A stretch of 64,000 nucleotides of DNA from Octopus sinensis (lineage: Eukaryota): contig NC_043005.1 of assembly GCF_006345805.1 (NCBI RefSeq), positions 92,008,001 through 92,072,000 on the forward strand. The letters are read 5' to 3'. The notes beneath the pieces were generated by a model. That model did not search any database. It was not told the DNA's origin and saw nothing but the letters and a program-made list of their open reading frames with translations. A program made the position numbers and the translations under genes. Below, one piece after another: positions 18,055-63,575 of the stretch. The first letter of the stretch is position 1, and each line of letters begins with the position of its first letter.

Positions 18055-20162
18055 AGTTTTGGCACAAGGCCAGCAATTTAGTAGGATGGCTAAGTTGATT
18101 ACATCATCCTCAGTGCTCAGCTGGTCCTATTCTATTGACCCTGAAAGGATGAAGGGCAAAGTTGACCTTAGTAGAATTTGAACTAAAAACGTAAAAATTT
18201 GGAAGAAATACTAGCAAGCATTTTCTCTGCACTCACCACCATAATAATAATAATCCTTTCTACTCTAATTAGAAGGCCTGAAACTCTGAGAGAGCCCAAG
18301 TCAATTAAACTGACCCCGGTGTTCAACTGGCACTTATTTTATTGACCCTGAAAAGATGTAAACATATCAACACCGGCTGTCAAACAATATTGGGGGACAA
18401 ATACACACACACATGATGGGCTTCTTTCAGTGAGATTGAACCTGGAACCATGTAGCTGGGAAGCAAACAGCATACCACACAACCATGCCTGCACCTTGAT
18501 TACATCAACATCACTACTTAAATGGTATTGGGTTGGCAAAAAAGTAATTTCTTTTTTCACAAATAGAATTAGGATTTTTTTCAATGGATTTTGTCAATGT
18601 TATGTTTCTTTTTTTGACATTTGATTGCTGTTACTTTTAGCTTACTTTAGAAGCAAATTGCATGTAATTTTGCTTACAGCTGTTAGTTCAGTATCAATTT
18701 TAACATGGAGTGCAAAAGTGAACATTTTAACCATATTTTGTTTTTTTATTTCCATAAAGGCAAAGAAAGCTGCTGAGGCTCAGAAAGAGATATGCGAAGT
18801 TTATCATGTTGATTGCTTAACAGAACGCACATGTCAGAAATGGTTTAAAAAATTTGGTTCTGGAAATTTTTCACTCAAAGATGATCAACGTTCTGGTTGA
18901 TCTACTGAAGTTGATGGCTGAATCAACGCCATAATTGAATCTGATTGTCATATAACAGTGCAAGAGATTGCAGAGAGGTTAAATGTATCACACACAGTAA
19001 TTGAAAATCACTTTAAATGTCTTGGACTCGTTAAGAAGCTTGATATTTGGGTTCCACATAAATTGAAAGACGTTCACTTAACATAATGATCAATATTTGC
19101 GATATGCATCTCAAATGCAATGAAATTGATCTTTTTTTTTAAAGGAATCATCACTGGTGATGAAAATTTGGTTGTCTACAATAACATCAATGGAAAATTG
19201 TCATGGTCCAAGCGTAATGAACCAGCTGCAAATCGCATCGAGAGCTAAATTCCACCAAAAAATGGTCAAGCTGTTAATTTGGTGGGATTACAAAGGTGTT
19301 GTGTATTTTGAGCTGCTTCCAAGGAACCAAACAATCAATTTAGATGTTTACTGTCAACAACTAATGAAACTAGAGGAAGCAGTCAAAGACAAATGGTTAG
19401 AATTAGCAAAACATAAAAGAATTGTGTTCCACCATGACAACGCTAGACCACACACGTCTTTGCTGACTGGTGAAAAATTATTGGAGCTTGGTTGGGAAGT
19501 GATGTCACATCCACCATATAGCCCTGACCTTGCTCCATCAAATTACCATTTATTTTGAAGTTTGAAAAACTCTTTGAATGGTAAAACTTTCAATAATGAT
19601 GATGACCTGAAATTGCACTTGCTTCAGTTTTTGGCTCATAAGGACACAGAAGTTCTATGGACACAGAGTCATGAAGTTGTCAGAAAGATGACAAAAGGTC
19701 ATCAAACAAAATGGAAAATATATAATTGATTTAAGTTCATTCTTTGTATGAGAAAAAAATTACTTTTATTACACACTAAAAAAAATCGAAATTACTTTCT
19801 AGCCAACCCAATATTTTCTCAAGCCTCAAGGGCTGAAAGACGAGTTTGATTTGTACTCAGAATGTAGAAAGCCAGAACAAATACAGCAGGGCACTTTTTT
19901 CTGACTTTCAAAGGATTCTGCTAATCCACCACCATTTTTGTTTCTAACATAAAATAAAGTACCAGCAGCATGTACTTTATTTTGTCAACACCCAGAAGAG
20001 TTAAAAGCAAAGTTGACCTCAGTGCAAATTAAAACTCAGAATGTAAAAAACTGAACCAAATACCACTGGCCATTTTGTCCCCCTCTCTCTCTCTCCCTAA
20101 CGATTCTCACATGCTGCAAAGCAAAGCATTTTGTCAGATACTCTAACGATTCTGTCAATCTA

Positions 20163-20480: not shown

Positions 20481-22569
20481 TGTCAATACCATCAGCAACC
20501 ATACAAGTGTTGATGTGATGAATGACGTACTCTGTTCACTCCATAAATGGTTGATAGATTGAAGTGAGCAGGGACACACTCAGAATTTGAGAAGACTCTT
20601 TAGTCTTGCTGAGGGCTAGGTAATCTCTGTTGTGTTGATGCCACAAAAATGAACTCAGTACATGCTGTAAAGTGAAACATTAATGTGAGATATGACCCTC
20701 CACCCTGATCCTGTTGAACCATCCAGTAAAATAATGTGTCTGATGAGAAGTGGGGTGACATAAATAGATTTACTTTTTTCCTTTTACTCGCTTCAGTCAT
20801 TGGACTGTAGCCATATCAAGGGCACTGTTTTAAGGGTTTTAGTTAAAGAAATTGACCCCAGAAATTATAAGCCTGACACTTATTCTATCAGTCTTTTTTG
20901 CTGAACTGTTAAGTTACAGAGACATAAACCAACAACAGCTGTGAAGCAGTGGGGTGGGAGCAAACACAAATGCAAACACACACACGTGATGGATTTCCAC
21001 AGTTTCTGCCTACTGAATTCACTCACTAGGTATTGGCTGCCCAGGGTTATTGTAGATGTCTGTAGGATTGAATCCACAAGCCATATGACTGCAAAGTGAT
21101 CCACACAGTCATGAAATTTTTACAGTGGTGCCCCAGTGTGTATATTCTACTTACTGCAACATTAAGCATTTACTGCTATATAAGTAACACAACGTTTCAT
21201 TCCACGTGGCCGTGATGTGGGCCACATGATAAGCATGACAAAATTTATGATAAATGTGTCCAAAATGATAAGAAACATGCCTGAATAACAAACTCAACAT
21301 ATGTCAGAATTGATGACATGTCAAAATCGTTTTAACAAACACAATAAAATTGATGAACATGAGAAATGCGGCAAAATAATGACAAACATAATATGACAAA
21401 ATTGATGACAAAATGGCAAAAATGATTCCAAAAGTGAAAATAAATATGACAAAATTGATGATAGACACAACAGAATTGAAGACACAACAAATTTCATGAC
21501 AACACCAGAAAATTCTAAATTCATGAATGCATGTGCAATTTCCATTATGTACAAGTATATTGCTTTAGTGAATTTCATACAGAAGCAGCTCATATATAAA
21601 ACCAGACCAGCAATTTGTTGTATGTTTGTACAAAGCATAACTATTCCTATAATAGGAAAATGTCAGTATGTGAATGTTCATATGAAACAGGAATTGCAGT
21701 CTCATATGAACATTCTGTAATTACCATGACAACTACTTAATAACCGGGCAATTTTCTATACAAAATGTAAGAGAGATGAAGTTTTAGAACCATTCTTCTT
21801 CCCAGGGTTTGATGATGATGATAATAAAAAATTTCAAAGAAGTGAAAAAGCTATTATTCCAAAATCTGAGATTATTTTGATTGTTTTGACTGAAGAAAAC
21901 ATAGACATATGTATATATTGTTGTTATTATACAAAAGTGGCGTAAGTCTAAAACGTTGCTTTTTCAGAAAATGTAAAAGTAGTTTCACCATTCCATAGAA
22001 AAACCGTTGTACTACACTTTGACAATTTTTGATATCTTGACATCTGAAGTAGCTGGAGATACGATAGTTTAACCAAAAGAACCGGCTATTGCAAGCAAAA
22101 ATAAATATTGAAAAAACACATTTGGTCAAATTTGGACATGCGACAGTTTAACATAATATGGCTGCACCTCTCCTACATACGGATCACAGTGGACTTTACT
22201 CTTGATGAGAAATCCTTGCAATACAACACGACGTCTAAAAACTTTTCATAAAACTGTCATTTTTGTCATTACTTAATTTTTATATTTATTTTTATACTTT
22301 CTAAACTTTCCTGTATTTTTTGGTCTTTCCTTCTGTCATCTCTTCCTTCTCTGGATGTCCTTACTCTGTTTTCTCTAGTTTGCACCCGTTATTTTGCCTT
22401 CCTCTCCCTCCGTTTCCTTTCTTTTCTCTCCACATCTTCCCCCCTTTCTCCTCACTTTCTATTTGTTCCATCTTCATCGCTTTTATTTTCTTTTATTTTC
22501 TTCTCCCACCTTGCATATATTTTCTTCTCCACACGCCCTTTTCTTCTTATTATTCTTTTATTTATTTAC

Positions 22570-22699: not shown

Positions 22700-25600
22700 C
22701 TTTTGTATGTTTCCTTTCCATGTTTAATTTCCTTTCCCTTTTTTTTTCTCCTTGTTATTCCACCATGCCGGACTATAAATCCTACCTCCTCACTCTTCAC
22801 CATCACCTAAAATATTACTTCTGCTTACTTCCTTCCCACTGCTTTCAGCCTCTCTTTACTCATTTAAAAAAAAACCGCTTCTCTAGCCACGTTTCATTTC
22901 TCAGCCACTGCTTACATCACAGCCTCATCCCTAAAGGTTTTTGCCTCCATTTCTACCCACTCTCCACTCTGCTTCACCCATCCTACCCATACTCCATACC
23001 ACATCTTACCGCCTTATGCGTGCCACCATTCGCTCCAATCTCTCTAAAATACATACCATCGACCGCCTTCTCCCTCCTGCTTTTTCCATCTTTTTCTCCT
23101 CTCTGCCACCCTTCCATGCTCACAACATGTTGCGTTATATAATTCATTTAAATCATCTCTTTCATCAATTTCTTGCCAACACCAAACTTCGTAAACTCCA
23201 CTCACTCCTCCACTCCATCACACCCGATGCCACTACCACAGCTCCTCCACTACCCTTCCCCCTACCTGATAGGCTCCACCCACACTCAACCCCACTGTCC
23301 CTCCAAACCCCCACACACATCCCCACTCCCTCCCCCAGCCTTCCACCAGCCCTCCTACCTCCACCCTACCCACCCCTCCTACTTCTATTCCATCCACCCC
23401 TTCTCCACTTCAGTCTGTTGTTACCATTCCCCCAGATCTTCCCCTCTCTGTGGTGAAGCACTCCATCCTCAGTAGGGGTCTGTGTTTCATCCCCCTCACT
23501 CCATCCTGTAAGGAATTTCAGACTCGTGCTGATATCCACAGCTTTGTGTGCCGCATCAGCTTGTGTGTGCTTTTCCGTGACACTCCACCCGCTTCAAACG
23601 AGGACTGCTTCACTGACCTGGGCCGCCGACCATCCCAGTGGATGCCTGTTCCTGGTCAGTTCCAAGCAGTGGATCTTTTTGCGGGCGCCTGTCAGCGCAC
23701 TTTGGAGCGGTTCAACTTCTCTGGGCGCCCACGTCGTCTCAACATCTCCCCAGCCGAACTCTCGGCACTTCATCCCCTCCGACGGCGCGCTGACATCGTT
23801 ATTAAACCGGCCGACAAGGGTGGAGCAGTGGTGGTATGGCGCGCGGATCTCTACAGGGCTGAAGCTCTCTGCCAACTCCATGACACCTCCTTCTACTGCC
23901 CTCTGTCCTCTGACCCCACGCCCAGCTACCAACAGACGGTCTCCTCTCCCATCCACGACCTCATCTCGTCCTCCCGTCTCCCCCACACCGCATTCAACCT
24001 CACCTCCGAACCCCCCGCACCTCCACCATTTACTTCCTCCCCAAAATCCACAAACCCGACAACCCTGGCCGCCCCATCATCTCCGCCTGTAACTGCCCCA
24101 CCGAGCTTATCTCCAATTATCTCGACCGTGTCCTTGCCTCCCTAGTAGCTTCTCTTTCTTCTCACATCCATGACACCAACCATGCTCTTCGTCTTTTCAA
24201 CTCTTTCTCCTTCCCTCCTGGCTCCTCCAAACTTCTCTTTACAATGGACATCCAGAGCCTCTACACTGTGATCCCTCACCACGAGGGGCTGCGTGCACTT
24301 AAACACTTCCTGGACCTCCGATCCAATCCCCAACCCGACACCCCCACACTCGTTCATCTGGCCAAACTTGTCCTCTCACTCAACTGCTTCTCGTTCGCGG
24401 GCGAGTTCTACCAACAAGTCTCGGAAGTGGTCATGGGAACGAGAATGGGCCCCAACTATGCGAACCTTTTCGTTGGCTATGTTGAGGCCCAAATATTCTC
24501 TAGTTTCACTGGTCCCACTCCCAAACTATATGGCCGTTACATTGATGACTGTATCGGTGCCACCTCACACTCTCGCGAACATCTAGACTCCTTCCTCTCT
24601 TTTGTCAAATCTTTCCATCCTGCCCTCCACTTCTCCTGCACTATCTCTGACACCTCTGTCTCCTTTCTTGATATTTCGGTCAGCATTCATCACTCCACTC
24701 TTACCACTTCGATCCACTACAAACACACGGACTCACACTCATACCTAAACTTCTCCTCCTCCCACCCCAAACACACCAAGCTTTCCATCCCCTATTCCCA
24801 ATTCCTCCGTCTACGCAGGCTCTGTAGTGACGACCATGACTTTGAGACTCACTTGCCCTTACCTCTCCAACACCACCCTCCTCACCGGCACCTATCATCG
24901 ACCCTATCGCATCATCGACTCCTTCACCTGCACCTCCAGCAATATCATCTATTGCATCTCCTGCTCTCTCTGCCATTCCCTGTACATCAGACAAACGGGA
25001 CGCCACTTGGCTGACCGGTTCACGGAACACCTCCGAGACATCCGCCTCGGCAATGACACTCCAGTCTCACGCCATGTCCGCTCCACCGGTCACTCCATGC
25101 AACACCTGTCTGTATTCGGATTGTCCTTGCAGAGGCCATCCGGACTCCCGTTTGCGCCGTGAACAGGGATTAATCTTCTCTCTTCATTCTTTTACGTCAT
25201 TTGGGCTCATCTCTCCTCCCATTTTCATCTAACCTCCTCCCTGACTCCTACTTCTCTTCACTCCTACATCTTTTCACCCCTTCTCTCTTTCCCTCTTCTC
25301 CCTTACTCTCTTTCTCTCTGCTCCCTCACTCTTCTTCTCTCCTCTCTCCCCCTCCCTCCTCCTTCTTCCCACCCAACTCTTCTCTCTTGCCCCAACTTCT
25401 ACTTCTCTTCACCCCTACTCTCTTTCCCTCTTCTCTCCTACTCTCTTTCTCTCCCCTCCTTCCCTCTTCCTCTCTTCTCTCCTACTCTTTCACCCTCTCT
25501 TTCTCTCTTCTCTCCTCCTCTCTCTCTCCTCACATAACCACCTTCCCCTCCCCCATAAACCCCCACCCTACTCCACCTTCCCGAACACCCTCCCCCTCGT

Positions 25601-33350: not shown

Positions 33351-33446
33351 CAGCATCAGAAAAGTAAAAGAATATAAACGTATAAAAATATAAAACATCT
33401 ATCGGGGGACTCTACTGTGTATGGTTAAACGTAATATATGTTTCTT

Positions 33447-33663
33447 TATTACCCACAAGGGGCTGAACATAGAGGGAACAAACAAGGACAGACAAACGAA
33501 TTAAGTCGATTACATCGACTCCAGTACGTAACTGGTACTTAATTTATCGACCCCGAAAGGATGAAAGGCAAAGTCGACCTCGGCGGAATTTGAACTCAGA
33601 ACGTAACTGCAGACGAAATACGGCTACGCATTTCGCCCGGCGTGCTAACGTTTCTGCCAGCTC
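33447..33663 (-). mobile_element. Main tRNA-derived SINE family; further copies at 52317-52720, 52734-52940, 53188-53360 and 60269-60352 (+), and 63125-63260 and 63575-63945 (-)
   Basis: Head ggcggcgagctggcagaatcgttagc (A-box-like) and gttctgagttcaaattcc (B-box-like), central cctttcatcctttcggggtcgataaa, many near-identical copies. Confidence 0.9.
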
Positions 33664-33904: not shown

Positions 33905-34008
33905 GGCGTTGGGGAAGGGTATCTTTTTTTCTTCACAAATGTAAATAAACCCAATCTTTCTTAAAGGAGGGACATATTCATACAGCACGGAATGTTGTTT
34001 ACCTAAAT
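33905..34008 (+). mobile_element. Internal piece of the GGATC-TIR MITE; its continuation lies inverted at 37155-37386
   Basis: Matches 44200-44305 of the intact copy; shares an exact 38-bp inverted overlap with 37349-37386. Confidence 0.8.
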
Positions 34009-34163
34009 AGCGTAGGTAGAAATACTTATCGTAAGCTAGGTTAGTGAGCGTCTGGGAGAAGATTAGCCTACGGGAGGGTCTTGACTTCGCATATTAGACG
34101 CAGGGCGATTTTTTTAGCCAAATATTTCGGAAAAAAGTGCGTCCTATATGCCGTCAAATACGG
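34009..34163 (-). mobile_element. 5' terminus (TIR and subterminal region) of the pogo element, displaced and inverted
   Basis: Ends tatgccgtcaaatacgg|ta, identical in sequence and orientation to the pogo 3' TIR at 39181-39197. Confidence 0.85.
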
Positions 34164-34165
34164 TA

Positions 34166-34383
34166 ATTGTGTAGATGAGGTCAGAACAGTAGTACAGGAG
34201 TATTTTCCATCAAGGACGAATGAATTTTGGAAGAGAGGCCTTGTAAGTATATCAGATAGATGGAAGAGCATTGTAGAAAATAAAGGAGAGTATATTTCAG
34301 ATTAAAAAATAACATTGTTTATCTTAATTTTGAAAAATAAAAGAAGTATAAAAAAACCGCATCATTTATGGGATGACCCAATA
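34166..34383 (+). mobile_element. 3' half of an internally deleted mariner (5' half at 39200-39596, minus strand)
   Basis: NCVDEVRTVVQEYFPSRTNEFWKRGLVSISDRWKSIVENKGEYISD* followed by TIR ccgcatcatttatgggatgacccaata. Confidence 0.9.
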
Positions 34384-34503
34384 TATCTTGTTTTGCATCA
34401 TAACCAATGTATACGTACCGAACATACTTAGATATCATAGAAAAGAATATAAATTTTGAGCTTGAAGAAGAGGTTTCGAATTACAAATGGAGAAAGTATA
34501 GAC

Positions 34504-34809
34504 CAGGGGTCGAGGAACTTTTTTAACCAATTACCCCAAAATTTACGCCGACGTTACCCCCCTTGATTTGAAAGGAAGAAAATCATAGATTCTTTGAATT
34601 CAAAAGGTTTGTTGAATCTGTTTGGTGTGACGTCTCCTAAACACGTCCATTACATTGTACAGATAAGTGTTGCCAGAAGAACAATTTTCTGTCTTAACAA
34701 GGAACATGTTTTTTATATAATTTTACTTATGTCTAATGTGTCTTCATTATCCCCAAGAATTTCATTTTAACCCCACTTGGGGTAATTTACCCCAGTTCAC
34801 CAACCCTTG
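34504..34809. mobile_element. hAT-Charlie-type MITE
   Basis: Termini caggggtcgaggaact / agttcaccaacccttg; 8-bp TSD gtatagac / gtctagac, matching the NTCTAGAN preference of Charlie elements. Confidence 0.8.
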
Positions 34810-35264
34810 GTCTAGACATTAAGTCGTCATTATTGCTATGAACACAGGCAATGTTTTCATTGGAATCAACTCGAAAAGCAAGTTTGTTATGGGGCAAAAC
34901 TGAATCACTTCAACAATAGATTGTAAATAGTATCGATTCATTTTTTGTTGTTTTTTTTTTTCATTTAATTTTCATTCACCAATGGAGATACATTCTGATT
35001 AATTGCCTTTCTTTGGTCATGACTGAGAAAGAAAAAAAAAACAATGTAGAACTTTATGATTTTAGACACATTGCAAAGAATTCGTATGAAAATATATTAA
35101 AAACTTGATAAAAGGGATGGAATGGAACATATATTGTGAATACATGTCTAAAAGATTACCTATTCCCCATATATGCATATATATATATATATATATATAT
35201 ATACTATAAGGATATATATATGTGTATATATATATGTGTATATATACATATACATAGATATATC

Positions 35265-35320
<56 letters not shown>

Positions 35321-35381
35321 TATATGTATATATATATTATATGTATATATATATATATACTCTCTCTCTCTCTCTCTCTTT

Positions 35382-35768
35382 TACTCTTTTACTTGTTTCA
35401 GTCATTTGACTGCGGCCATGCTGGGGCACCGCCTTTAGTCGAGCAACTCGACCCCGGGACTTATTCTTTGTAAGCCCAGTACTTATTCTATCGGTCTCTT
35501 TTGCCGAACCGCTAAGTGACGGGGATGTACACACACCAGCATCGGTTGTCAAGCAATGCTAGGGGGACAAACACAGACACACACACATATATATATATAC
35601 ATATATACGACGGGCTTCTCTCAGTTTCCGTCTACCAAATCCACTCACAAGGCTTTGGTTGGCCCGAGGCTATAGTAGAAGACACTTGCCCAAGGTGCCA
35701 CGCAGTGGGACTGAACCCGGAACCATGCAGTTGGTAAACAATCTACTTACCACAGCCACTCCTGCGCC

Positions 35769-35770
<2 letters not shown>
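35382..35770 (-). mobile_element. Second tRNA-derived SINE family with an internal microsatellite; also at 43347-44017 and partially at 55352-55445
   Basis: Minus-strand head ggcgcaggagtggctgtggtaagt...ccgggttcagtcccactgcgtggcaccttgggcaagtgtctt; repeated copies. Confidence 0.85.
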
Positions 35771-35855
<85 letters not shown>

Positions 35856-35949
35856 GTGCAACCTGCCTTATGTTTGAGCCTAAAAGAGGTAAAATGATTG
35901 TTTAGACGTTTTTTGAACAACCGAAATAAAGAAAGCTATTGTTTGAAGT

Positions 35950-36021
<72 letters not shown>

Positions 36022-37386
36022 CACATATATATATATACATCTATATACACACATACACACGCACATAAGCACTTAAAATAAAGGCATGTATTTACTTTTT
36101 TATTCTATAATTTAAAGCTTTTGGCAGCTCCATCACCTCATTTAACGAAAAGCATTTTAAAAAATATTATTAAATATTATTAAATCAAAATGAACTCTTG
36201 TAACTTCCCACTTAATGGAAACTGTCCCGTCAATTCCTTACTATACTGTGTGAAGATGGAATTTAACAATGGTTCGCAACCAAAATCTTGATATCGGATA
36301 GACAAAAAAATTTGTTATAACATTTTATATACACAGGCATTTGTTGATCATACCAAACAGAAAACTCAATATTGGACTCTCAAAATATATCTAAAGATTA
36401 GAACAAAATAGTGTCGGTAACTTTAATCTAATACGATCTATCTTCGCTTTTGCAACAGCTTATAAATATAACAGTATAAAGAAGCTTTGCATGAAATAAA
36501 TTATTTTATTATAACTGCAGAGCAAGAACTTGAACTCAACAACACAACATACTGAGTACTTGTTTACATAAATAAAAAAGTTATTAATAAATTTCCAAAG
36601 GCAGGTCCATGCTAGAAATATTCCCTGTGAGAAATTTCTGACATTTTCGTTTTTCGTTTAACTATTTGTTTTCTGGTTAACTATTTCTACTGTGCCCTGT
36701 TTCAAGCTACTTTTGATCATCTTATGGTTTTATAAATGATAATTTAATTTCGAATGCATTCTGAAAATCAACGATATTTCCTCTTGACTTTATTTTCTCA
36801 CTTAAGCATACTGTCGCAGTATCCTTTTTTTCTTTATTACATTGTAGTGTTTCAGTGGGAATGATGTAAGATACTTTTAGTTAATAGGAGTGAATTGCAC
36901 TGTTATTTTTTATTTTCTGTTTTTTACTTTGTGGTGTTATGGGCTGTGATGAAGTTATGTGGTGTTGGTGGAGGGAATTGCAGATGAGGTAGACGGAAGT
37001 GAGGACTGCAGGGGCCTGTGACACAGGCAGAGGGCATGCGTGGGCAGGAAGCACGTGTGGTCAGTTCGAGCAGAGACGGCAGCGAGAAAAGACGGGTTTA
37101 TTTCGTGAGAGTGACCGCTCATTCTGCCGAGGTCAACAAGTAAGGCCTTTTGGGGGATCTTTTCCTTTTGAACGGCACTTTGTAACATAATTTCTAGTTA
37201 ACTAAACACTTTTAAACTTCGTATACTGGTAAAATGTGTTTATAAAGCATCATTTTTACTCGGCTTTATTGAGAAAATTCTATAGGTTGTAAGATATTTC
37301 GTCAGAAATTTCGAGCATTTCGGCAATTTTAACCAATCGCTGGAGTCCATTTAGGTAAACAACATTCCGTGCTGTATGAATATGTC

Positions 37387-39197
37387 TTAATGATATTTTC
37401 CGTACTCATGCATCATTATTTTATTGCTAGTATTATTATTATTATTATTACCAGTATTATTACTTTAAAATACGAATTATCGTAAAAATCAAAGCAATCT
37501 ACCGTAAATTGTTAGGCTGCGATCCATGACACACGTTTACTAATATCAGCTGGTCGGAACCCTAACTCGATGCTATCTGACGGTGAGGAGTAAAACTACG
37601 GAATGCACATGATAGTTGCGAGTTCGTGTATATACGGAGGTAGGTTGGATATCTTGGTACAACAAAGTTTATGATCATAACAAAACACACTACCACAGTA
37701 CAAACACCCTCACGGCTATGGCAGCAAAAAGATCAAGCTATAAAATCTCCTACAAACTACGAGTGCTAGATTATGCCAAGGAGCATGGAAATAGAGCAGC
37801 AGCAAGGGTTTTTGGGCCACCACCTACAGAAAATATGATACGTGTCTGGCGACAGCAAGAAGAGCAGCTGATGAAAGCACAGAAAGGTAAACATAACCTT
37901 CGTTGCCCAGCCCCACATTGGCCAGAACTTGAGGATGATATAAAAACGTGGGTGCTTGATGAGAGAAACTCAGGGAGAAGTGTATCTACCAAAATGATAA
38001 TTCATGAGGCCATGAGAGTAGCAGAACAACGAGGGATACAGAACTTTGCTGGTTGGTGTTACAGGTTTATGAAACGGAAGGGTTTATCAATGCGTACAAA
38101 AACATCCATTGCACAAAAAATGCCTGCTGATTATGAAGAAAAAATATTGGATTTTCATAGATTTGTTATAAATGCAAGAAAGAAAACCTGTTTTGAACTG
38201 GTCCAAATAGGGAATATGGACGAAGTTCCACTCACATTTGATGTACCATCCAACAGGACTGTGAGTGTCAAAGGGTCTAAAACGGTTTCGATAAAAACCA
38301 CTGGCCACGAAAAGACCCACAATACAGTAGCTCTGGCCTGTTGTGCTGATGGCATAAAACTGCCACCTCTTTTGATATTTAAGAGAAAAACTCAGCCTAA
38401 GGATAAAATTCCAAGAGGTGTACTAGTTCATGTTCACGAAAAAGGCTGGATGGACGAAAATGGAATGAAACTGTGGTTACAAAATATATGGTCAAGGCGT
38501 CCTGGTGGACTATTAAGAAAACATTCTCTTCTGGTTTGGGATCAGTTTAGAGCACATAGAACTGAAGCCATTAAAAAAAGGGTGGGAGAATCGAAAACGC
38601 AGTTAGCTGTCATTCCTGGTGGACTGACGAGTCAATTGCAGCCTTTATATGTGTCTGTGAATAAGTCATTTAAGCAGAACATGCGTGAACATTGGAACAA
38701 GTGGATGGCAGAGCCACATCATGCCCTCACACCCACAGGAAGAATGAAGCGGCCCACCATTGCTGAAGTGTGTGAGTGGGTGAAGAAATCTTGGGATGAT
38801 GTTAGGCCTGAAATCATTGTGAAGGATTTTAAGAAGTGTGGCATTAGCAATGCCCTTGATGGCACAGAAGATGATGCGTTATTTGAAGACAGTGATTTCA
38901 GCAGTAGTGATGAAGATGTTCCTTGTTTTGAAGATGATGAAGACTTTTCTGGTGTAGAAGATGATGAAGAGTTTTCTGGTTAAAAAGATGATTAAAGATG
39001 ATTACTATTGTAATTTGTATGCTTTCCTTTTGTATGCTTGCTTTTATACAGCAATGTTTTCTGCTTTTGTAATGTGCTGCTAGACTGCTTTCAACAATAT
39101 ATGCTTAAATACACTTAAAACTTTTTTCCTGAATTTGACCTGCTGAAATGAGGGTGCGTCTAATATGCCAGTGCGTCTAATATGCCGTCAAATACGG
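37387..39197 (+). mobile_element. pogo/Tigger-family DNA transposon, body and 3' TIR
   Basis: Contains the transposase ORF; 3' end gtgcgtctaatatgccgtcaaatacgg|ta. Confidence 0.92.
37718..38983 (+). CDS. pogo transposase (Brinker-like DBD, CENP-B-type HTH, DDE_1), 421 aa, open frame, third catalytic Asp replaced by Tyr
   Basis: First ATG at 37718 (MAAKRSSYKISYKLRVLDYAKEHGNRAAAR). Motifs GNMDEVP, LVWDQF and GGLTSQLQPLYVSVN, where the family consensus is QPLDV. Confidence 0.9.
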   Translation: MAAKRSSYKISYKLRVLDYAKEHGNRAAARVFGPPPTENMIRVWRQQEEQLMKAQKGKHNLRCPAPHWPELEDDIKTWVLDERNSGRSVSTKMIIHEAMRVAEQRGIQNFAGWCYRFMKRKGLSMRTKTSIAQKMPADYEEKILDFHRFVINARKKTCFELVQIGNMDEVPLTFDVPSNRTVSVKGSKTVSIKTTGHEKTHNTVALACCADGIKLPPLLIFKRKTQPKDKIPRGVLVHVHEKGWMDENGMKLWLQNIWSRRPGGLLRKHSLLVWDQFRAHRTEAIKKRVGESKTQLAVIPGGLTSQLQPLYVSVNKSFKQNMREHWNKWMAEPHHALTPTGRMKRPTIAEVCEWVKKSWDDVRPEIIVKDFKKCGISNALDGTEDDALFEDSDFSSSDEDVPCFEDDEDFSGVEDDEEFSG

Positions 39198-39199
39198 TA

Positions 39200-39596
39200 A
39201 TATTTTTTCCATCCAAATGATTTTGAAGACTGCAGAATAAATGATAGTCAGATGGGGCAATATCCGGTGAATATAGAGGGTGGGGCATCGTTTCCCATTC
39301 AAACTGTTCCAGCCTTCTGAATGTCACCCTCAGTGTATGTAGGTAAGCGTTTTACTGATGGAGGAACACCTTTGTCTTGAAACCATAGAAAGTCGTTTTT
39401 CTTCTAGCGCTGACTTAAGCCGCTCAAGGTGCATGCAGTAGATCTCCTTTGTTATCATTTGACTTGAGTTTAAAAGTTCAAAGTGGACTAAATCTTTCAT
39501 ATCCTACCAAACAGATAACACCTTACGTGGGTGAAGACCTTCATTAGTCTGGGGTGCAATTGAAAAAACTGCATTATTTATAGGATGACTCAAATA
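39200..39596 (-). mobile_element. 5' half of the internally deleted mariner interrupted by the pogo
   Basis: 5' TIR tatttgagtcatcctataaataatgcagttttt matches the TIR ending at 34383; encodes GLHPRKV..VHFELL..MPHPLYSPDIAPSDYHLFCSLQNHLDGKNI. Confidence 0.9.
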
Positions 39597-43044: not shown

Positions 43045-43609
43045 TCCCTCTAGTAGGCGTTCACAATTCTTGTCTACCAAATTTCCTTCGCATGCTTTTT
43101 GGTCTGCCTAAATCTATAAGGAGGGGACACTTGCTGAAGGTGTCCTGGTTGAATCTGAAACCACATTCTTGTCAAACTCATATCATGCCTGCGTCACCGA
43201 CCTCCACCCAACTAAAAAGAACAAATATAAGCGATTAATACATACTAGTAGACAATTGTTTAAAAAGGAGATTGGCTTTTGATGAAAAATATTACTATTT
43301 TAAAGTAGATTTATGTAACAGGAAGTCCAACCCCGATTTGAACTCTTTTACTCTTTTACTTGTTTCAGACATTTGACTGCGGCCATGCTGGAGCACCGCC
43401 TTTAGTCGAGCAAGTCGACCCCAGGACTTACTGTTTGTAAGCCTAGTACTTATTCTATTGGTCTCTTTTGCCGAACCGCTTAAGTTACGGGGACGTAAAC
43501 ACACCAGCATCGGTTGTCAAGCGATGTTGGGGACAAAGACAGACACACACACTTACATATATATGACGGGGGACAAACACAAATATACAACATGCACACA
43601 CACACACAT

Positions 43610-43641
<32 letters not shown>

Positions 43642-43777
43642 TTCGTTTTTGGATTTGGTTTGCAAGATTCTTTATATGAGTTCGTGTGTTGAAGCATATA
43701 ATTTCCACTGAAATTTTACCGCTGAGTGTGTTAAATAATAAGGCACTAAAAGAGAATGACTCTCCCCAGACACAACA

Positions 43778-43840
<63 letters not shown>

Positions 43841-44087
43841 TATATATATATACATACGACGGGATTCTTTCAGTTTCCATCTACCAAATCCACTCATAAG
43901 GCTTTGGTCGGAATCGAGGCTATAGTAGAAGACACTTGCCCAAGGTGCCACGCGGTGGGACTGAACCTAGAACCATCTGGTTGGTAAGCAAGCTACTTAC
44001 CACACAGCCACTCCTGAACCGTAAACCTTTAGTTCTATTCAACATTTTTAATGCATGGGTCACGACCACATTCATTAAAATATTTGG

Positions 44088-44496
44088 GGATCTTTTCGGT
44101 TTGAACGGCAGTTTTTTCTAGCGGTGTCATATGAAATTGTCACCATAATTATGACCCTAGAATCCATCTATTGCATTTCAATCTCTTTTAGGGTTAGGGA
44201 TGGGGGAAAGGGTATATTTTTTTCTTCACAAATGTAAATAAACCCAATCTGTTTCTTAAACGAGGGACATATTCATACGGCACAGAATGCTTTTTAACTC
44301 AATAGACGTCACTGATTGGTTGAAATTGCAGAAATTGAAGAAAAAAACAACAAATATCTTACAAACTATAGAATTTTCTTAATAAAGCCAAGAGAAAAAG
44401 TTGTTTTATAAACACATTCTACCAGTATACAAAGTTTAAAATTTTTTAATTACCTAGAAATTATGTTAAAAACTGCCGTTCAAACCGAAAAGATCC
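44088..44496. mobile_element. MITE of about 410 bp with GGATC-terminal TIRs and an 8-bp TSD (Merlin-like, tentative); second copy at 51789-52205 in the opposite orientation
   Basis: TIR ggatcttttcggtttgaacggcagtttt / aaaactgccgttcaaaccgaaaagatcc. TSD atatttgg (44080-44087 and 44497-44504); second copy actggctg / gctggctg. Confidence 0.88.
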
Positions 44497-49637: not shown

Positions 49638-52600
49638 GAGTATAGATAGATGCATCGGTTAGGATGCGAAAATGATTGATACATATGTGATGGTAATGTA
49701 AACAAAGGCAGTAAGTCTTACATTGAAACAACTTTGTTCTTGCACTGGTAAATTCGCTGGGTAGAGGTGTCACTGTGGTAGACTGGTTAGTTTCGTTGGG
49801 TAATTAGAGCGGGGTGAATATTATTTAGCTGCGGGCTACCTCGTTTAATTACGTACATTTTTTCTCACGTGTTCATCTCGTATTATACGAGGTGTATATC
49901 ATAGAATAGAGCGTCCACTGCTTTTGTATTGGTTGCTTAGGGTTAGTGTAATCTATATTTTTAGAAATTAGAGGTGTGTAATATATATTTTATATTTTAC
50001 AATAAAAATTGACTCGTATAAGCTTCGTTGGTTTGTTGCTTATAAGTTCTTACTGTCACTTTTTATGATGTGTATGTGTACAGAAAACGAAAGTGAAAGT
50101 TACCCGTTATAACAATTATTATTTTCTTTTTACATAATTTGTATCTTTTTCCACCTCCATTTTCTTTGAAATTATTGTGTTTGAGGAGATATTCTTTCTG
50201 CTAAGCAACATAATCGGTGCTTTAGCGCCAACGATATTCTACCCTATAACTAAATTGTTTGTCAAACTGAAGTGAATGAATTTACTTTATATTTAAATGT
50301 CGATTTGCAAAAGAGACTTTTCTGCGTCTCCTAGTAGAATATAGTAGAAATAATTTGAAATTGTCTGGTCATCAATGTCTTGTAGAATATACTAAGATTC
50401 ATAGACAAAGTTTCAGATATCCTCACCAAAATCGATTTATCGTAACCATTGACAGGCGGCAAATCGACGAAAGCACAACCAGACACAAACAAAATCAATT
50501 ACCATATATACCATTCTTCTTCTTCTGCTGCTGCTGCTGCTGCTGATGCTGCTGTTGCTTTATAAGAGGTCCACTTATTATTTTCGAATAAATTTTTAAT
50601 AAGGAAACGAACCCCGTTTCATTATGTCCGCTGCCGTCCTGTCATCATCGCCCCTTATCTTGGTCACTACTTCTGCCCTCGCTATTACCACTTTCATTGT
50701 TATCATCGCTGACACCGCCACAGCAACATTGTAAAAGCTGCTGTAATTATTTCTGACGTCATTTCCGCCACAAGCACCGCCACTTGCCATTAACTCCATG
50801 AACCACACCAACTTCAACACCAGCACCAACAAAGTTACCTGTGTTGTTCCCAACAGTGCCAGCGAATTCAATTTCCTATCGACTGTTTATAACTGAATAA
50901 GATTTATATTTCCAAAGATAAAATGGTCAAAGAATAAGGATGGCTTGCATCGTCATCGCAAGTTATGGAGATTCGCATGAATGGAATTCTTAGGCAGCAA
51001 GATTTAAATATTTATCAAGCAATGTTCTCCATAATGGATATTTCTAAAAATTGCTTCCAATAAAAATGAGAAATCGGAACCCGGATATTGAAAGGTCTTG
51101 AACATCGTCAGTCAATTTGGAAATAGTTAACAATGTAAACATTGTCCAACTCGGAACAGGCAGAGAATCTAAATGAAATTTGGATTTTCACAGAGAAATA
51201 AGAAGAGAGATATACTGAATTCCGTTTTATGATTTTATATCACTGGGTACGTGGTCGTTCTACTGTTCAAGCTGAGTTGACTAATATGTTTTAAATAAAG
51301 GGAGTCGATGTTCACAATACAGATTTTATAATCGCTTTCTCCTATAACATAAAGTGAAGACATTTCAGTAATTAACTGAGATGCTGAAAATAATATTTCT
51401 TATAGCTTATTGTATAACGATGGAATAATTCAACTACTGAGTTCTAACACATGCATGGCCACAATTTTGAAAAGAGCCGTGCAGCTGATTATATTGATCC
51501 TGGCACTTGGCTAGTACTTTATTTTACCGACCCTGGAAAAATGAAACGTGAATATGAGCTCGCTGTGATTTGAACTTACAACACAAATTGGCGTAGTTAA
51601 ATGCTTTAAAAAACATTTTATCGGTGTTTCAAGCAATTCTGTCAATTCACTTCCTTATAAATTCCATGTGATTATGAAACGGAAGCCCTGCCTTATGTAC
51701 AAACGATGTCTATCGGTTCATGCGCGAACCTGACAGGAAGATTAAAGGCCTGAGTATAACAAAAAAAGTATACTACTAAAACTGGCTGGGATCTTCTCGG
51801 TTTGGACGGCAGTTTTTAACATAATTTCTAGGTAACTAAAAAATTTTAAACTTCGTATACTGGTAGAATGTGTTTATAAAACATCTTTTTGTCTTGGCTT
51901 TATTGAGAAAATTCTATAGTTTGTAAGATATTTGTTGTTTTTTTCTTCAATTTCTGCAATTTCAACCAATCACTGACGTCCATTGAGGTAAACAACATTC
52001 TGTGCCGTATGAATATGTCCCTCGTTTAAGAAACAGATTGGTTTTATTTACATTTGTGAAGAAAAAAAGATACCCTTCCCCCCACCCCTAACCCTAACCC
52101 TAAAATAGATTGAAATGCAATAGATCGATACTAGGGTCATAATTATGGGTGACAATTTCATATGACACCGCTAGAAAAAAACTGCCGTTCAAACCGAAAA
52201 GATCCGCTGGCTGTTGCTGAATGAAAATAGTTTATTGTTTCGGAGGAGAGTTTCTCTACTCACTTTTGTAAATTGCTGTATTGCTTATAAAGTTTTGGGT
52301 ACTCCTACTTGACTTGGGCGGTGAGCTGGCAGAATCGTTAGCACGCCGGGCAAAATGCTTACTGGTATTTCACCTGCCGTTATGTTCTGAGTTCAAATTC
52401 AGCCGAGGTCGACTATGCCTTTCATCCTTTCGGGGTCTATAAATTAAGTACCAGTTACGCACTGGAGTCGATATAATCGACTTAACCCGTTTGTCTGTCC
52501 TTGTTTGTCCTCTCTGTGTTTAGCCCCTTGTGGGTAGTAAAGAAATAGGTATTTCGTCTGCCGTTACGTTCTGAGTTCAAATTCTACCGAGGTCGACTTT

Positions 52601-52999
52601 GCCTTTCATCCTTTCGGGGTCAATAAAATTAGTACCAGTTACTCACTGGGGTAGATGTAATCGACTTAATACCTTACCCAAAATTTGAGGTCTTGTGCTT
52701 CCCGTAGAAAGGATTATTATTGTCATTATCAAGGCGGCGAGCTGGCAGAATCGTTAGCGCGCCAGACGAAATACTTAGCGATATTTTGCCCGTCGCTATG
52801 TTCTGAGTTCAAATTCCTCCGAGGTCGACTTTGCTTTCATCTTTTCGGGACGACATAATAAGTACCAGTTGAAAACTGGAGTCGATGTAATCAACTCATT
52901 CTCCCACCAAAACTGATGTCTTTGTGGTAAAATTTGAAACTATTATTATTATTCAGTAGTCTTATTTCTATAACATGCTTTCATTTCACTACCGAGCGC

Positions 53000-53150
53000 A
53001 GCTCTGTCGTTTGCTGTGATGCTCTTATTTTTACTATATTGAAAGTGTTTTACGTAGGATATGTGTAGTGCCTAGTCGTGCTATTTTCTGTATGTTATAT
53101 ATATTTGTTAGTCCTGGTGTCTTTGTTATGAATTTATCTGAATATTTTTT
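53000..53150 (-). mobile_element. R4/Dong-like LINE extreme 3' end
   Basis: TPGLTNIYNIQKIARLGTTHILRKTLSI* matches the R4 C-terminal motif IQK.ALLGTAHILRK.L. Confidence 0.75.
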
Positions 53151-54399
53151 ATCATGACTCATGCGCCCACTATCATCATCATCATCATGAGCTGGTCGAA
53201 TCGTTGGCACGCCTACAAAACGCTTAGCGGTATTTCGCTCTGAGTTCAAATTCCGCCGGAGTCGACTCTGCCTTTTACCCTTTCGGGTCGATGAAATAAG
53301 TGCCAATTACCCACTGTGGTCGATGTAATCCCCTCCCCACAAATTTTAGACTTTGTAGAAAGGATTATTATAGTAGAAGGATTACTATAGTAGAAAGGAT
53401 TATTATTATTATTATTGGTGTTGTTGCTGCTGCTGCTGCTTGTTTGTTTGTTTGTTTGTTGGTTGAGCGAAGCGGTCTTCGTCCCAGAGTGGGAGAAGTC
53501 CGAAACGTGGTCCTTTGCTATTCGTAAGACCCGCAGAAGAGAAAGCAGGTCAACCCCCGACACCGAGAGCATCGACGGATGGATGAATGCGCATCCAGGC
53601 TCAGCGGTTGCGTAGGAAGTCGGGTGCTGCTGCTGCTGTTGTTGCTGTTTTTTTTACTGTAAGCTCAGACATAAAACATTTCTCCTCCTCACTGCACACA
53701 TTTTGCTGGTCGCTAATTTTGAATGCTTAAAGCAAGCAGAAATAACAACAAACCAGACTTGATTTCTTCTGAACAACTTACAAGAGCTTCTGCCGTAAAT
53801 AGACTGTATCAGAAATGTATGTTGCTCACCATCCTACCATATTAAAACTCATTCAACTGTCATGATATAATTGTTAGGTTAATCGGTGAATCACTCTCAA
53901 GATATTTCTCAGTCAAATTTTCACAGGAAAGTTCTCCGCTATTTTTTTTTTTTGTTTATTTGTTTGTTTTTTTTCTTGTATATTTTGACTTGGATATGAA
54001 TAAAACCTGCATCTGCATTTTCGTTCGCCAAATTTGCTTTTTCAGTTCACTCACTGACAAGGAAAATTCACAACTAGTTTATACACGTAGATTTATTATA
54101 AAATAACCTAATTAGATCTTATACTAGAACGGCGGTAACATCGACTACGATTGGTAATATCCAACTTCGACGCAGTCACCTTGTATATAATTCAGTGGAC
54201 AACTGGTTCATTTCCATCGGTTGTGTAGATTTGGCTGTAACCGTACTCGATAGTAGAACATAGAACGGGACTCTCTGAAAGGCCTAACAAAGAAAATTAC
54301 TTTGCATTTTTCTAGTAGTACAGTCTGCCTAATGATGAACCATGTCTCAAGCGGCTTGCTTCTCAAAATAGGTTGATCATGCTTGACCTGGGGTATATG

Positions 54400-55318: not shown

Positions 55319-55355
<37 letters not shown>

Positions 55356-57359
55356 GACGGGCTTCTTCCAGTTTCCGTCTACCAAATCCTCAAAGCTTTG
55401 GTCGGCCAGAGGCTTATAGTAGAAGACAGTGGCCTAAGGTGCTGCGCATGTGCACACACACTCACACACACACACACGCACGCACACAAACACACACACA
55501 TGCACGCACATACGTGTGTCTACGCGCAGCTGCACGCACGCATACTCGCACGTACAGGATTCTTATTGCTTATCCTACCCACCTCGCTTTTCCCTTCGGC
55601 CTAGCATTCTTTTTCCTTCTACTCAATGACTACTTAACTGCACCCAACTTATTCCCATTTGGAACGATCTTCCCACTAATATTTTTATTGGTCATTTGAC
55701 TTCGATTTTCTTTTTTCTTGTCCCTTTTCGACTGGCCGGTTGCGGCCAGTTTGATAGTTGCCAAGCGGCAACGTAATCAACGTAGAGGTAAGAAGGACTT
55801 GAAGTCCAGCCAAGTTAGTTTTGTGTTTGTTACAACTTATGTACTAAGCATCACTTTGCTATGAAACGATCGTAACCTGTTCCCCTCCTTACTTTTTGGA
55901 TCATTTGTCCTTTATATAAATTGTCAACATTTTCATCGGCACCACCTTATTTTTTTCTGACGATGCTGAATTATGTACATTTTATCTTCATACTTTTCTA
56001 CATGAAATTCAGAGAAGGCATTGGGCTGAATGGTACGATTTTATTTGTATAAGATATACGTAAAAAGAGTAATGTGGAAACCTCTAGAAGGTTTTTGAAG
56101 ATAGAGCTCAGATATGTATATGATATTGCCTTTATTGCTGCGTTCTGAGAAGAATTAAGGATTCTGATGAAGTGAAAGGAAAAAGTGATGAATATAGTTT
56201 ATTCATTAATTTTGATAAAACTGAATCAATAATTATCTCCTGAACGATTGACCAATATAATCCTATAACTGATAATCAAACTGTCAAAGTGGTGAATGCG
56301 TTTTGCCATCTTGGATGTATTTCTATAAATCAATGTGATGACAGCCTAAGAGATAAAAAGAACTGCAATTGTAAAATACGCTGTTATCTGTTTTTACTCT
56401 GGGAAAATCTATTGATAGGTAACAAACAAACAAACAAACAAAAAAGACCAGGCTGAAATTGCTGTACACTTTGATATTTCCAATTGCAACATATAGAGCT
56501 GAATACTAATCTCTTAAAAAAAACTGTTTGAAAAAACAGAATTTTCCAAGTTTGATATTATAGAACCTTGTTAAGAATTTGCTAGATAGAAATAAAAATG
56601 ACAAATCAATATGTATTGAATTGAATTGGAATTGAATGTGGCATTGTAAACGAACTGGACAAGCAAAAACTTAAATATTCTGAACATTTCATATGAGCGG
56701 ATGATCGACAAAAATGTTAAAACCCTACAAAAAAATATTGAAAACCCTAAAGAAAAAGTTGGGTTGATGACATAGAGTTGACAAGCTTGATGATGCATCA
56801 ATAAAGAAGAACAACAGAAAATATAAATAATAGAGAAGAAATGGAGGATGAGACACTCTCACTCCAAAGTTGGTAGTTCCATATACTGACGACTGAATCG
56901 TTCAAAGTGTGTAATACCTCCTGTTTCATTACTTTGTTTACACGTAGTATCCTATCACTTGTAAATACAACCACTTATACCAAAATTAAGTGTATAAAGA
57001 TCGATAAATTTTACTAGTAGTGTTTAGACAGTTACCCTTCAATAATTTTTCAGTTTGATTCGTATTAATTTACAGCTCGTTTTTCTTCCTCTTTCTTAAC
57101 GATCCTGGAATCAAACGGGCATGATGGGTCGTTAAGTAAGCAACTTCGCTTTTCCTTATCTACAGTCATCATATCTAGTCTATTATTTTCTAATTTCTTG
57201 TCTGTTTGAATCGGAAAGTCCTACAAAATCTTACATTTCTTCAACTCCAGTATTCTTTCGACTCGATGATTGTACCATGTGTTTCCAGTTTCACATCCAC
57301 GCCTCCCTTTCTGATATTCTTCCTGTGCCAACTTAGGGCATTCTGTCACAATGTGTCCA

Positions 57360-63284: not shown

Positions 63285-63575
63285 CCCCAGGAAACCAGGT
63301 AACTCCAAAATTCAAAAAATAGTGCTCATAGGAACTGCCCATATCCTACGTAAAATACTGTCTATGTAATCTAACATTTTAAAACAAACTTATAATTTCT
63401 TTATGTTTTCTTAAACATTCTTTAGAACAATATTATGTGCAAAACCAGATATATGACACCCTAGGCATAACACCAACATGAACACTTCTAACTTGTTGTC
63501 TCTTGAGGTCTCTGAGTGAGACTTGGAGCCAACTTGTACAAATACAAAGCAAAAGTCAAACATATAATAATAATA
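63285..63575 (+). mobile_element. R4/Dong-like LINE 3' end and 3' UTR inserted in a (TAA)n tract
   Basis: IQKIVLIGTAHILRKILSM* followed by UTR and taataataat; flanked by AAT/GAT runs between SINE copies. Confidence 0.75.

What the first reader, a model, noticed from the sequence alone, without database searches (positions are those of the whole stretch)
33971..39596. 3.4-kb inversion shown by three interlocking broken transposons and a 38-bp inverted duplication
(1) The pogo TIRs (34147-34163 and 39181-39197) are now in direct orientation. (2) The mariner the pogo inserted into has its 5' half on the minus strand (39200-39596) and its 3' half on the plus strand (34166-34383). Rejoined across the shared TA they read in frame ...LQNHLDGKNI-NCVDEVRT.... 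(3) A MITE is split into oppositely oriented pieces overlapping by an exact 38-mer (33971-34008 is the reverse complement of 37349-37386). Flipping about 34009-37386 restores all three. The inverted duplication suggests staggered breaks or template switching rather than ectopic recombination.
Basis: seen in the sequence. Interest (0 to 1): 0.7.

Follow-up and report, generated by a model that had tools for sequence, protein, structure and literature searches.

The report
Small inversion splitting three nested transposons
A 3.4-kb stretch of this repeat-rich animal genome was flipped by one event that cut through a small hAT-like transposon and a pogo transposon nested in a mariner, copying 38 bases to both ends; this is a clean but ordinary example of a known way that inversions form.

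Summary
The 38-mer 33971-34008 is the exact reverse complement of 37349-37386 and does not extend. Both pogo ends and both mariner terminal repeats now lie in direct orientation. The two mariner coding pieces, on opposite strands, join across one TA into a peptide that aligns without gaps to Mos1 transposase. The two MITE pieces join into one 295-bp match (E 7e-100) to two intact copies in the same window. Subterminal similarity to distant pogo relatives shows that the end at 34165 is a genuine left end lying backwards. Reversing 34009-37348 and dropping one 38-mer restores a 1966-bp pogo with inverted ends and TA duplications, a 612-bp deleted mariner and a contiguous MITE. One breakpoint sits mid-MITE, staggered by 38 bp. 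The other sits 155 bp inside pogo. Neither junction shows microhomology or pre-existing inverted homology. This fits the staggered-break, fill-in and end-joining model described for Drosophila. Replicative template switching remains a mechanistic rival. Not testable here: read support, polymorphism, and the exact pogo junction, because no intact same-species copy was found. It is a new member of a known kind, of modest interest.

The parts
33911..34008 (-). Distal piece of the hAT-like MITE (MITE positions ~195-294). It now lies on the opposite strand to the other piece. Weak similarity continues to ~33895, and the last ~125 bp including the right terminal repeat are absent.
   Evidence: It matches 52081-51982 (93%) and 44204-44305 (89%). 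It joins the other piece into one contiguous match. Alignment.
33971..34008 (+). 38-bp breakpoint duplication, copy 1 (left edge of the inverted segment).
   Evidence: Exact reverse complement of 37349-37386 with no extension. It is present once in each intact MITE copy.
34009..34163 (-). pogo left end, 155 bp, displaced and inverted. Junction J1 lies at 34008|34009.
   Evidence: Terminal 20-mer on the minus strand. 73 bp align to the left end of relative L046 and only 29 bp to its right end. The internal inverted motif CTGCGTCTAATATGCG at 34088-34103 is conserved in relatives.
34164..34165 (.). TA target-site duplication of the pogo insertion, left copy.
   Evidence: Read from the sequence. 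Keeping a single TA preserves the mariner reading frame.
34166..34381 (+). Mariner 3' part: the last 46 codons (NCVDEV...GEYISD*), the 3' untranslated region and the 3' terminal repeat (34359-34381). It was carried along by the inversion.
   Evidence: Translation, Mos1 alignment, terminal-repeat search.
34382..37153 (.). Remainder of the inverted segment: unique sequence, a SINE-like repeat (35376-35764), long AT/TATA microsatellites, and a G+C-rich stretch at 36940-37130.
37154..37386 (+). Proximal piece of the hAT-like MITE (positions 1-232, including a diverged left terminal repeat). Its last 38 bp (37349-37386) are copy 2 of the breakpoint duplication. Junction J2 lies at 37386|37387.
   Evidence: It matches 51788-52019 (85%) and 44496-44266 (82%). 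Contiguous match after joining.
37387..39197 (+). pogo body and right end: 331 bp of 5' untranslated region, open reading frame 37718-38983 (421 aa), and a right end with two tandem GTGCGTCTAATATGCC motifs.
   Evidence: Pfam DDE_1 (4.7e-32) and HTH_Tnp_Tc5 (1.9e-10). The right end aligns over 48-54 bp to the right ends of L002, L046 and L047. Motif search.
39198..39199 (.). TA target-site duplication of the pogo insertion, right copy.
39200..39593 (-). Mariner 5' part: the 5' terminal repeat (39571-39593) followed, after an internal deletion, by the degenerate middle of the transposase up to ...LQNHLDGKNI.
   Evidence: Translation, Mos1 alignment, terminal-repeat search.

Best explanation
Inferred history: a hAT-like MITE inserted first and is now ~14-16% diverged from its relatives. 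About 3 kb away sat an internally deleted mariner on the minus strand. A pogo element inserted into a TA inside that mariner's coding remnant.

Later, one rearrangement broke the chromosome at two places. The first break was in the middle of the MITE, with the two strands (or two sister chromatids) cut 38 bp apart. The second was 155 bp inside the pogo left end. The segment between them was rejoined backwards by non-homologous end joining after fill-in of the 38-nt overhangs. The 38 bases therefore now sit at both ends of the inverted segment in opposite orientation.

Shown: the present arrangement; the four orientation anomalies; the exact 38-bp inverted duplication; and the restoration of all three elements on un-inversion.

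Inferred: the order of events; that no bases were lost at the pogo break; and the repair pathway.

Consequence: this pogo copy can no longer be mobilised as a unit, because its ends are direct and 5 kb apart. Its transposase also carries Tyr in place of the third catalytic Asp.

My confidence that a real inversion of this structure occurred is about 0.85-0.9. Given that, my confidence in staggered breaks with end joining over a replicative route is about 0.6-0.65.
For: - The 38-mer inverted duplication is exact and does not extend.
- The pogo end 20-mer and the mariner terminal repeat each occur twice, both times on the same strand.
- The joined mariner peptide aligns without gaps to Mos1 257-344, E 5.7e-18.
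- The joined MITE gives one 295-bp match (E 7e-100) and one 294-bp match (E 1.5e-88) to two intact in-window copies, each of which holds the 38-mer once.
- The backwards pogo end is of left-end type and the other end is of right-end type, by comparison with relatives.
- The scripted un-inversion gives a pogo of 1966 bp plus TA/TA with inverted ends, a 612-bp mariner with inverted terminal repeats, and a single 38-mer.
- Both junctions show 0 nt of microhomology and no inserted bases (junction print-out).
- Precedent: 17 of 29 Drosophila inversions carry inverted breakpoint duplications. The shortest is 46 bp, and in 12 of 18 only one breakpoint is duplicated (PMC1885836; also PMC5080602).
- The event looks recent: the duplicates match at 38/38 bases and the pogo reading frame is still open.
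Against: - There are no reads, other individuals or outgroup, so the ancestral arrangement is inferred only from transposon integrity.
- The exact pogo junction cannot be checked. The nearest proteins in a database of 5.8 billion are 67% identical, and their 5' untranslated regions stop aligning after ~80 bp.
- A template-switch route gives the same product.
- A 38-nt overhang is long for simple staggered nicks, although the published Drosophila cases are longer.
Confidence: 0.8

Rival explanations
1. The same real inversion, made replicatively. A fork or break-induced replication copies A plus the 38-mer, switches to the opposite strand inside pogo, copies backwards through the segment and the 38-mer again, then switches back (two FoSTeS/MMBIR-type template switches).
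For: This produces exactly the observed order, A-x-rc(C..B)-rc(x)-D. Inversions and inverted duplications by template switching are well documented (PMC2621351 and PMC9199198, listed).
Against: Both junctions have 0 nt of microhomology, whereas MMBIR and FoSTeS junctions typically show 2-5 nt or more. There are no extra templated insertions, and the event is balanced apart from the 38 bp. The microhomology test assumes that no bases were lost at the pogo break.
Confidence: 0.25
2. Assembly artefact. The true genome is un-inverted, with an intact MITE and a 38-bp templated insertion in pogo, or is otherwise different. The assembler mis-oriented the segment between the two 38-bp inverted repeats.
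For: A de Bruijn graph with k below 38 cannot orient a segment bounded by 38-bp inverted repeats. No reads are available here.
Against: The alternative orientation still needs an unexplained inverted 38-bp copy inside pogo. The window has no N and resolves microsatellites of ~190 bp and many SINE copies, which suggests long reads. For long reads, 38 bp is not ambiguous. Chimeric reads give one fold-back junction, not two reciprocal ones.
Confidence: 0.07
3. Ectopic (non-allelic homologous) recombination between two inverted copies of the MITE.
For: The MITE is multi-copy in the window, with two further copies.
Against: The breakpoints carry complementary halves of one copy that share only 38 bp. 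The partner sequence at each junction is pogo, not MITE. Recombination would leave two full-length chimeric copies.
Confidence: 0.01
4. Transposase-mediated rearrangement: alternative or aberrant transposition by pogo, mariner or hAT transposase.
For: Three DNA transposons sit at the breakpoints. Alternative transposition is known to make inversions (PMC8225341, listed).
Against: Neither breakpoint is at an element terminus: one is 155 bp inside pogo and the other is at MITE positions 194/195 and 232/233. The pogo left end is still joined to its original TA and mariner flank. There is no 2-bp or 8-bp target duplication at the new junctions and no TA at the break sites. The local transposase has lost a catalytic Asp.
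Confidence: 0.02
5. Independent insertions of separate fragments, with no inversion.
For: None beyond the high transposon density of the window.
Against: The mariner halves abut at one TA, in frame. The MITE halves are exactly complementary with a 38-bp overlap. The pogo ends are of left and right type. The fragment ends are internal positions without target duplications.
Confidence: 0.01

Closest known systems
Inversions with inverted breakpoint duplications formed by staggered breaks (Ranz et al. 2007, Drosophila melanogaster group; D. subobscura O and E inversions)
   Same: A sequence that is single-copy in the standard arrangement sits in inverted orientation at both ends of the inverted segment. 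[quoted passage not shown] There are no pre-existing inverted repeats, and the joins are blunt.
   Different: The scale is much smaller: 3.4 kb here against hundreds of kb to Mb. The 38-bp duplication is slightly shorter than the shortest reported case (46 bp). The ancestral state is inferred from split nested transposons in one assembly, not from a comparison between species. The host is a different, unidentified animal.
FoSTeS/MMBIR replicative template-switch rearrangements
   Same: They can yield an inverted segment with short duplicated sequence at its edges.
   Different: No microhomology was seen at either junction. The event is balanced and simple rather than complex.
Alternative-transposition inversions (Ac/Ds in maize p1/p2, P-element hybrid insertions)
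   Same: Inversions associated with DNA transposons, with element ends left in abnormal relative orientation.
   Different: In those cases the breakpoints are at transposon termini and carry a new target-site duplication. Here the breaks are internal to the elements and carry no such duplication.

Membership tests
Staggered-break inversion with inverted breakpoint duplication | Two reciprocal junctions bound a segment whose reversal restores collinearity. | tested here: met
   Un-inversion restores pogo, mariner and MITE together. Four independent orientation markers agree.
Staggered-break inversion with inverted breakpoint duplication | A sequence that is single-copy in the standard arrangement is present once at each end, in inverted orientation. 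| tested here: met
   The 38/38 inverted duplicate. The 38-mer occurs once in each of two intact paralogous MITE copies. The ancestral allele itself was not seen.
Staggered-break inversion with inverted breakpoint duplication | No pre-existing inverted homologous repeats at the two breakpoints. | tested here: met
   The partner of the MITE at each junction is pogo sequence, and there is no similarity beyond the 38-mer.
Staggered-break inversion with inverted breakpoint duplication | The standard (un-inverted) arrangement is observed in another individual or species. | not testable with these tools
   The collections held no reads or related genomes. The exact pogo protein is not on record.
FoSTeS/MMBIR template switching | Microhomology at the junctions. 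| tested here: not met
   0 nt at both J1 and J2, on the assumption that no bases were lost at the pogo break.
Non-allelic homologous recombination inversion | Full-length homologous repeats in inverted orientation span both breakpoints. | tested here: not met
   Only complementary MITE halves with a 38-bp overlap are present.
Alternative-transposition inversion | Breakpoints at transposon termini, with a new target-site duplication. | tested here: not met
   The breaks lie 155 bp inside pogo and in the middle of the MITE, with no TA or 8-bp duplication at the junctions.
pogo/Tigger (Tc1/mariner superfamily) | Transposase with a CENP-B-type helix-turn-helix domain and a DDE_1 domain. | tested here: met
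   PF03184 at 4.7e-32 and PF03221 at 1.9e-10. Named relatives are pogo or POGK.
pogo/Tigger (Tc1/mariner superfamily) | Terminal inverted repeats flanked by a TA duplication. | tested here: met
   Met only after un-inversion: the ends at reconstruction positions 4193 and 6162 become inverted, and both are flanked by TA.
pogo/Tigger (Tc1/mariner superfamily) | Intact DDD catalytic triad (an active copy). | tested here: not met
   The third Asp (LQPLD, present in all 9 relatives) is Tyr311 here. This copy is a family member but probably inactive.
mariner | Homology to mariner transposase, plus ~30-bp terminal inverted repeats. | tested here: met
   Mos1 and SETMAR matches, E 5.7e-18 to 1e-15. 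The terminal repeats TTGRGTCATCCYATAAATRATGC occur twice. The element is internally deleted, 612 bp.
hAT-type MITE | Short non-coding element with terminal inverted repeats and an 8-bp target duplication. | tested here: met
   The intact copies 51788-52205 and 44083-44496 have 29-bp terminal repeats and 8-bp flanking duplications, CCAAATAT and (A/G)CTGGCTG. Assignment to hAT rests only on the 8-bp length. The local copy lacks its right end.

The most novel reading that the evidence does not exclude
The 38-nt stagger may not be an accident of random breakage. It could be the footprint of a specific process in this genome, such as paired nicks by a structure-specific or transposon-derived nuclease at MITEs, or a template-switch route that needs no microhomology. 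In that case kilobase-scale inversions with short inverted duplications would be frequent and still segregating in this transposon-rich animal genome. They could then be counted from a single assembly by looking for split nested transposons.
Probability: 0.07. Interest if true: 0.5.

Novelty: new member of a known kind. Interest (0 to 1): 0.25.

Why it matters
This is an unusually well-documented micro-inversion. Three nested or neighbouring transposons act as internal rulers, so both breakpoints can be placed to the base and the ancestral state rebuilt from one assembly without an outgroup. It extends the staggered-break signature, known mainly from large Drosophila inversions, to a 3.4-kb event with a 38-bp duplication in a different animal. 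It also suggests a simple reference-free screen: look for transposon ends in direct orientation and split elements with short inverted overlaps. Such a screen could measure how common small inversions are. The event has no evident functional consequence beyond immobilising an already crippled pogo copy.

Tried and rejected
- Looked up the exact pogo protein in the assemblies collection: not on record.
- Searched for pogo homologues to find a same-species intact copy. The best hit is only 67% identical, from tick, frog, bichir, lizards and marine metagenomes.
- Fetched seven relatives' loci. Their coding regions and the first ~50-80 bp of each end align to ours, but the 5' untranslated regions do not. 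They confirm the left-end and right-end identities but cannot test the junction at pogo position 155.
- Scanned metagenome contigs with the 18-mer terminal repeat. All 42 hits fail to extend and are taken as chance.
- Searched for homologues of the joined mariner peptide: only two weak hits. Pfam at E 0.01 gave nothing for the 92-aa peptide. The comparison with solved structures did work.
- Folded an intact MITE to see whether the 38-mer sits at a hairpin tip or cruciform. Only the terminal-repeat stem forms, so there is no special structure at the break.
- Ran Rfam and tRNA scans of the window to type the SINE-like repeat or the host: no hits.
- Searched homologues of the reverse-transcriptase fragment to identify the host. 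The top hits are unnamed (79% or less), so the host remains unidentified. The SINE-like repeat reminds me of cephalopod genomes, but that is memory, not a test.
- Considered a piggyBac-like or other 3.4-kb element with 38-bp terminal repeats at 33971-37386. Rejected because there is no target duplication and the 38-mer is internal MITE sequence.


Full report
**What is in the sequence.** The window is A+T-rich, transposon-dense eukaryotic (animal) DNA with no N. Every element of the finding checks out.

- The 38-mer 33971-34008 is the exact reverse complement of 37349-37386. The bases immediately outside mismatch on both sides.
- The pogo terminal 20-mer TACCGTATTTGACGGCATAT occurs only twice in 64 kb, at 34146-34165 and 39180-39199. 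Both are on the minus strand, and 0.01 matches are expected by chance. The two ends are therefore direct, not inverted.
- The mariner terminal repeat TTGRGTCATCCYATAAATRATGC also occurs only twice, at 34359-34381 and 39571-39593, again both on the minus strand.

**Identity of the three elements.**

*pogo.* The reading frame 37718-38983 (421 aa) has the DDE_1 and Tc5/CENP-B helix-turn-helix domains. Its nearest relatives are annotated pogo or POGK, at 67% identity or less.

*Mariner.* The minus-strand peptide ending ...LQNHLDGKNI (39327-39200), joined across a single TA to the plus-strand peptide NCVDEVRT...GEYISD* (34166-34305), aligns without any gap to Mos1 transposase residues 257-344 (E 5.7e-18) and to SETMAR. 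The junction falls in the middle of that alignment. The mariner is an internally deleted, degenerate copy of 612 bp.

*MITE.* The window holds two intact copies of the third element.
- One is at 51788-52205 (418 bp) and the other at 44083-44496 (414 bp, minus strand).
- Both have 29-bp terminal repeats, GGATCTTTTCGGTTTGAACGGCAGTTTTT.
- Both have 8-bp flanking duplications, so the element is a hAT-like MITE.
- The local pieces, 37154-37386 and the reverse complement of 33911-33970, join into one uninterrupted blastn match to each intact copy: 295 bp at 86.8% (E 7e-100) and 294 bp at 84% (E 1.5e-88).
- Each intact copy contains the 38-mer once.
- The local copy lacks the last ~125 bp. That loss is unrelated to the inversion.

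**Is the backwards pogo end really the missing left end?** No same-species pogo copy was available, so I used distant relatives whose ends I could locate. These were L046 (marine metagenome, both ends), L050 (a lizard, both ends), L045 (left end), and L002 and L047 (right ends).
- The reverse complement of 34093-34165 aligns over 73 bp to the left end of L046, but only over the 29-bp terminal repeat to its right end.
- 39150-39199 aligns over 48-54 bp to the right ends of L002, L046 and L047, but only 27 bp to the L046 left end.
- The left-end layout is a terminal motif, a T-run, then an inverted CCTGCGTCTAAT at ~60 bp. The right-end layout is two tandem GTGCGTCTAATAT motifs. Both are conserved across the family.

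The end at 34165 is therefore a true left end lying backwards, not a second right end from another copy. Beyond ~80 bp the untranslated regions no longer align. The exact pogo junction, the reverse complement of 34009 joined to 37387, therefore rests on the geometry fixed by the MITE, not on direct comparison.

**Reconstruction.** I reversed 34009-37348 and dropped 37349-37386 in a script. The result has:
- a pogo of 1966 bp with inverted ends, flanked by TA on both sides;
- a mariner with inverted terminal repeats around it;
- a contiguous MITE with a single 38-mer.

Two breakpoints therefore explain all the anomalies. One is in the MITE, staggered over positions 195-232. The other is 155 bp inside the pogo left end. 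The ancestral inverted unit is 3378 bp.

**Mechanism.** The junction sequences are ...CCTAAAT|AGCGTAGG... (J1) and ...ATATGTC|TTAATGA... (J2). I compared them with the ancestral neighbours: GGACTCC after the 38-mer, CCTCCTT after its reverse complement, and ...CTACGCT|TTAATG in pogo. Neither junction shows shared bases or inserted bases.

Ectopic recombination is excluded, because there are no pre-existing inverted repeats at the breakpoints.

Transposase-driven rearrangement is also unlikely:
- The breaks are internal to the elements.
- The pogo left end is still attached to its original TA and mariner flank.
- No 2-bp or 8-bp target duplication marks the new joins.
- The intact MITE folds only through its terminal repeats, with nothing special at the break.

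The structure matches the staggered-break model of Ranz et al. (PMC1885836). In that model, paired single-strand breaks, or breaks at different positions on sister chromatids, are followed by fill-in and non-homologous end joining. In that study 17 of 29 inversions carried inverted breakpoint duplications, the shortest was 46 bp, and in 12 of 18 cases only one breakpoint was duplicated. The same signature is reported for D. subobscura inversions (PMC5080602).

A two-switch replicative route (FoSTeS/MMBIR; PMC2621351 and PMC9199198) gives the same product and cannot be excluded. The absence of microhomology argues against it.

**Timing.**
- The MITE is old: 84-87% identity to its relatives, which are 93.5% identical to each other.
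- The mariner is degenerate.
- The pogo insertion is younger, because its reading frame is still open.
- The inversion is younger still, because it splits pogo and its two 38-mers are identical.

The pogo transposase is nevertheless probably dead. The third catalytic Asp (LQPLD in all nine aligned relatives) is Tyr311 here, and three residues are missing before WCYRF.

**What could not be tested.** I could not check read support, polymorphism or an outgroup arrangement. A mis-orientation by an assembler is conceivable only for short k-mers, and it would still leave an unexplained inverted 38-mer inside pogo. The gap-free resolution of ~190-bp microsatellites and many SINE copies suggests long reads. 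The host was not identified.

**Verdict.** This is a real-looking, recent 3.4-kb inversion with a 38-bp inverted breakpoint duplication. It is best explained by staggered breaks and end joining. It is a new, small-scale example of a known class and is of modest interest. Its main value is to show that split nested transposons can reveal micro-inversions from a single assembly.

Noticed in passing
window 38648-38650 (codon 311 of the pogo reading frame 37718-38983): The pogo reading frame is open, but the third catalytic Asp (LQPLD in all 9 aligned relatives) is Tyr here. Three residues are also missing before WCYRF. This copy is probably catalytically dead.
   Followed up: partly
L046:177-3371, L050:4324-7146, L002:2792-2845, L047:2811-2858, L045:2305-2360: Relatives at only ~61-68% protein identity share recognisable terminal and subterminal end motifs with this pogo. 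They come from a marine metagenome, a lizard genome, an unnamed GenBank assembly and Logan contigs. Named protein hits span tick, frog, bichir, caecilian and lizard, a patchy spread suggestive of horizontal transfer.
   Followed up: partly
window 51788-52205 and 44083-44496: Two intact copies of the hAT-like MITE (29-bp terminal repeats, 8-bp target duplications). Copy 1 carries a short telomere-like (CCCTAA)3 run inside (about 52085-52103) and copy 2 a shorter one.
   Followed up: partly
window 52323-53330, 63094-63935, 33429-33663, and scattered (18091, 20277, 41916, 60275): A ~160-235-bp repeat family, partly in tandem-like arrays. One copy lies ~250 bp from the MITE piece at the left breakpoint, and another lies at a similar distance from the intact MITE copy 1.
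   Followed up: no
window 35376-35764 (other copies 43343-44016, 55334-55448, 20773-20982): A SINE-like repeat inside the inverted segment, embedded in long AT/TATA/GATA microsatellites. It gave no tRNA or Rfam match.
   Followed up: partly
window 36940-37130: A G+C-rich, G-skewed stretch ending in CAACAA|GTAAGG, directly upstream of the MITE left end. It could be a non-coding exon with a splice donor that the inversion reoriented. Untested.
   Followed up: no
window 19157-19558 and 23450-25160: A second, unrelated mariner fragment (PF01359, 1.1e-16), and a reverse-transcriptase fragment. The RT's relatives carry PF26215, and one carries a GIY-YIG domain, which is Penelope-like.
   Followed up: partly
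window 38908-38992: Three 27-bp tandem repeats encode the acidic C-terminal tail of the pogo transposase (DEDVPCFEDDEDFSGVEDDEEFSG).
   Followed up: no
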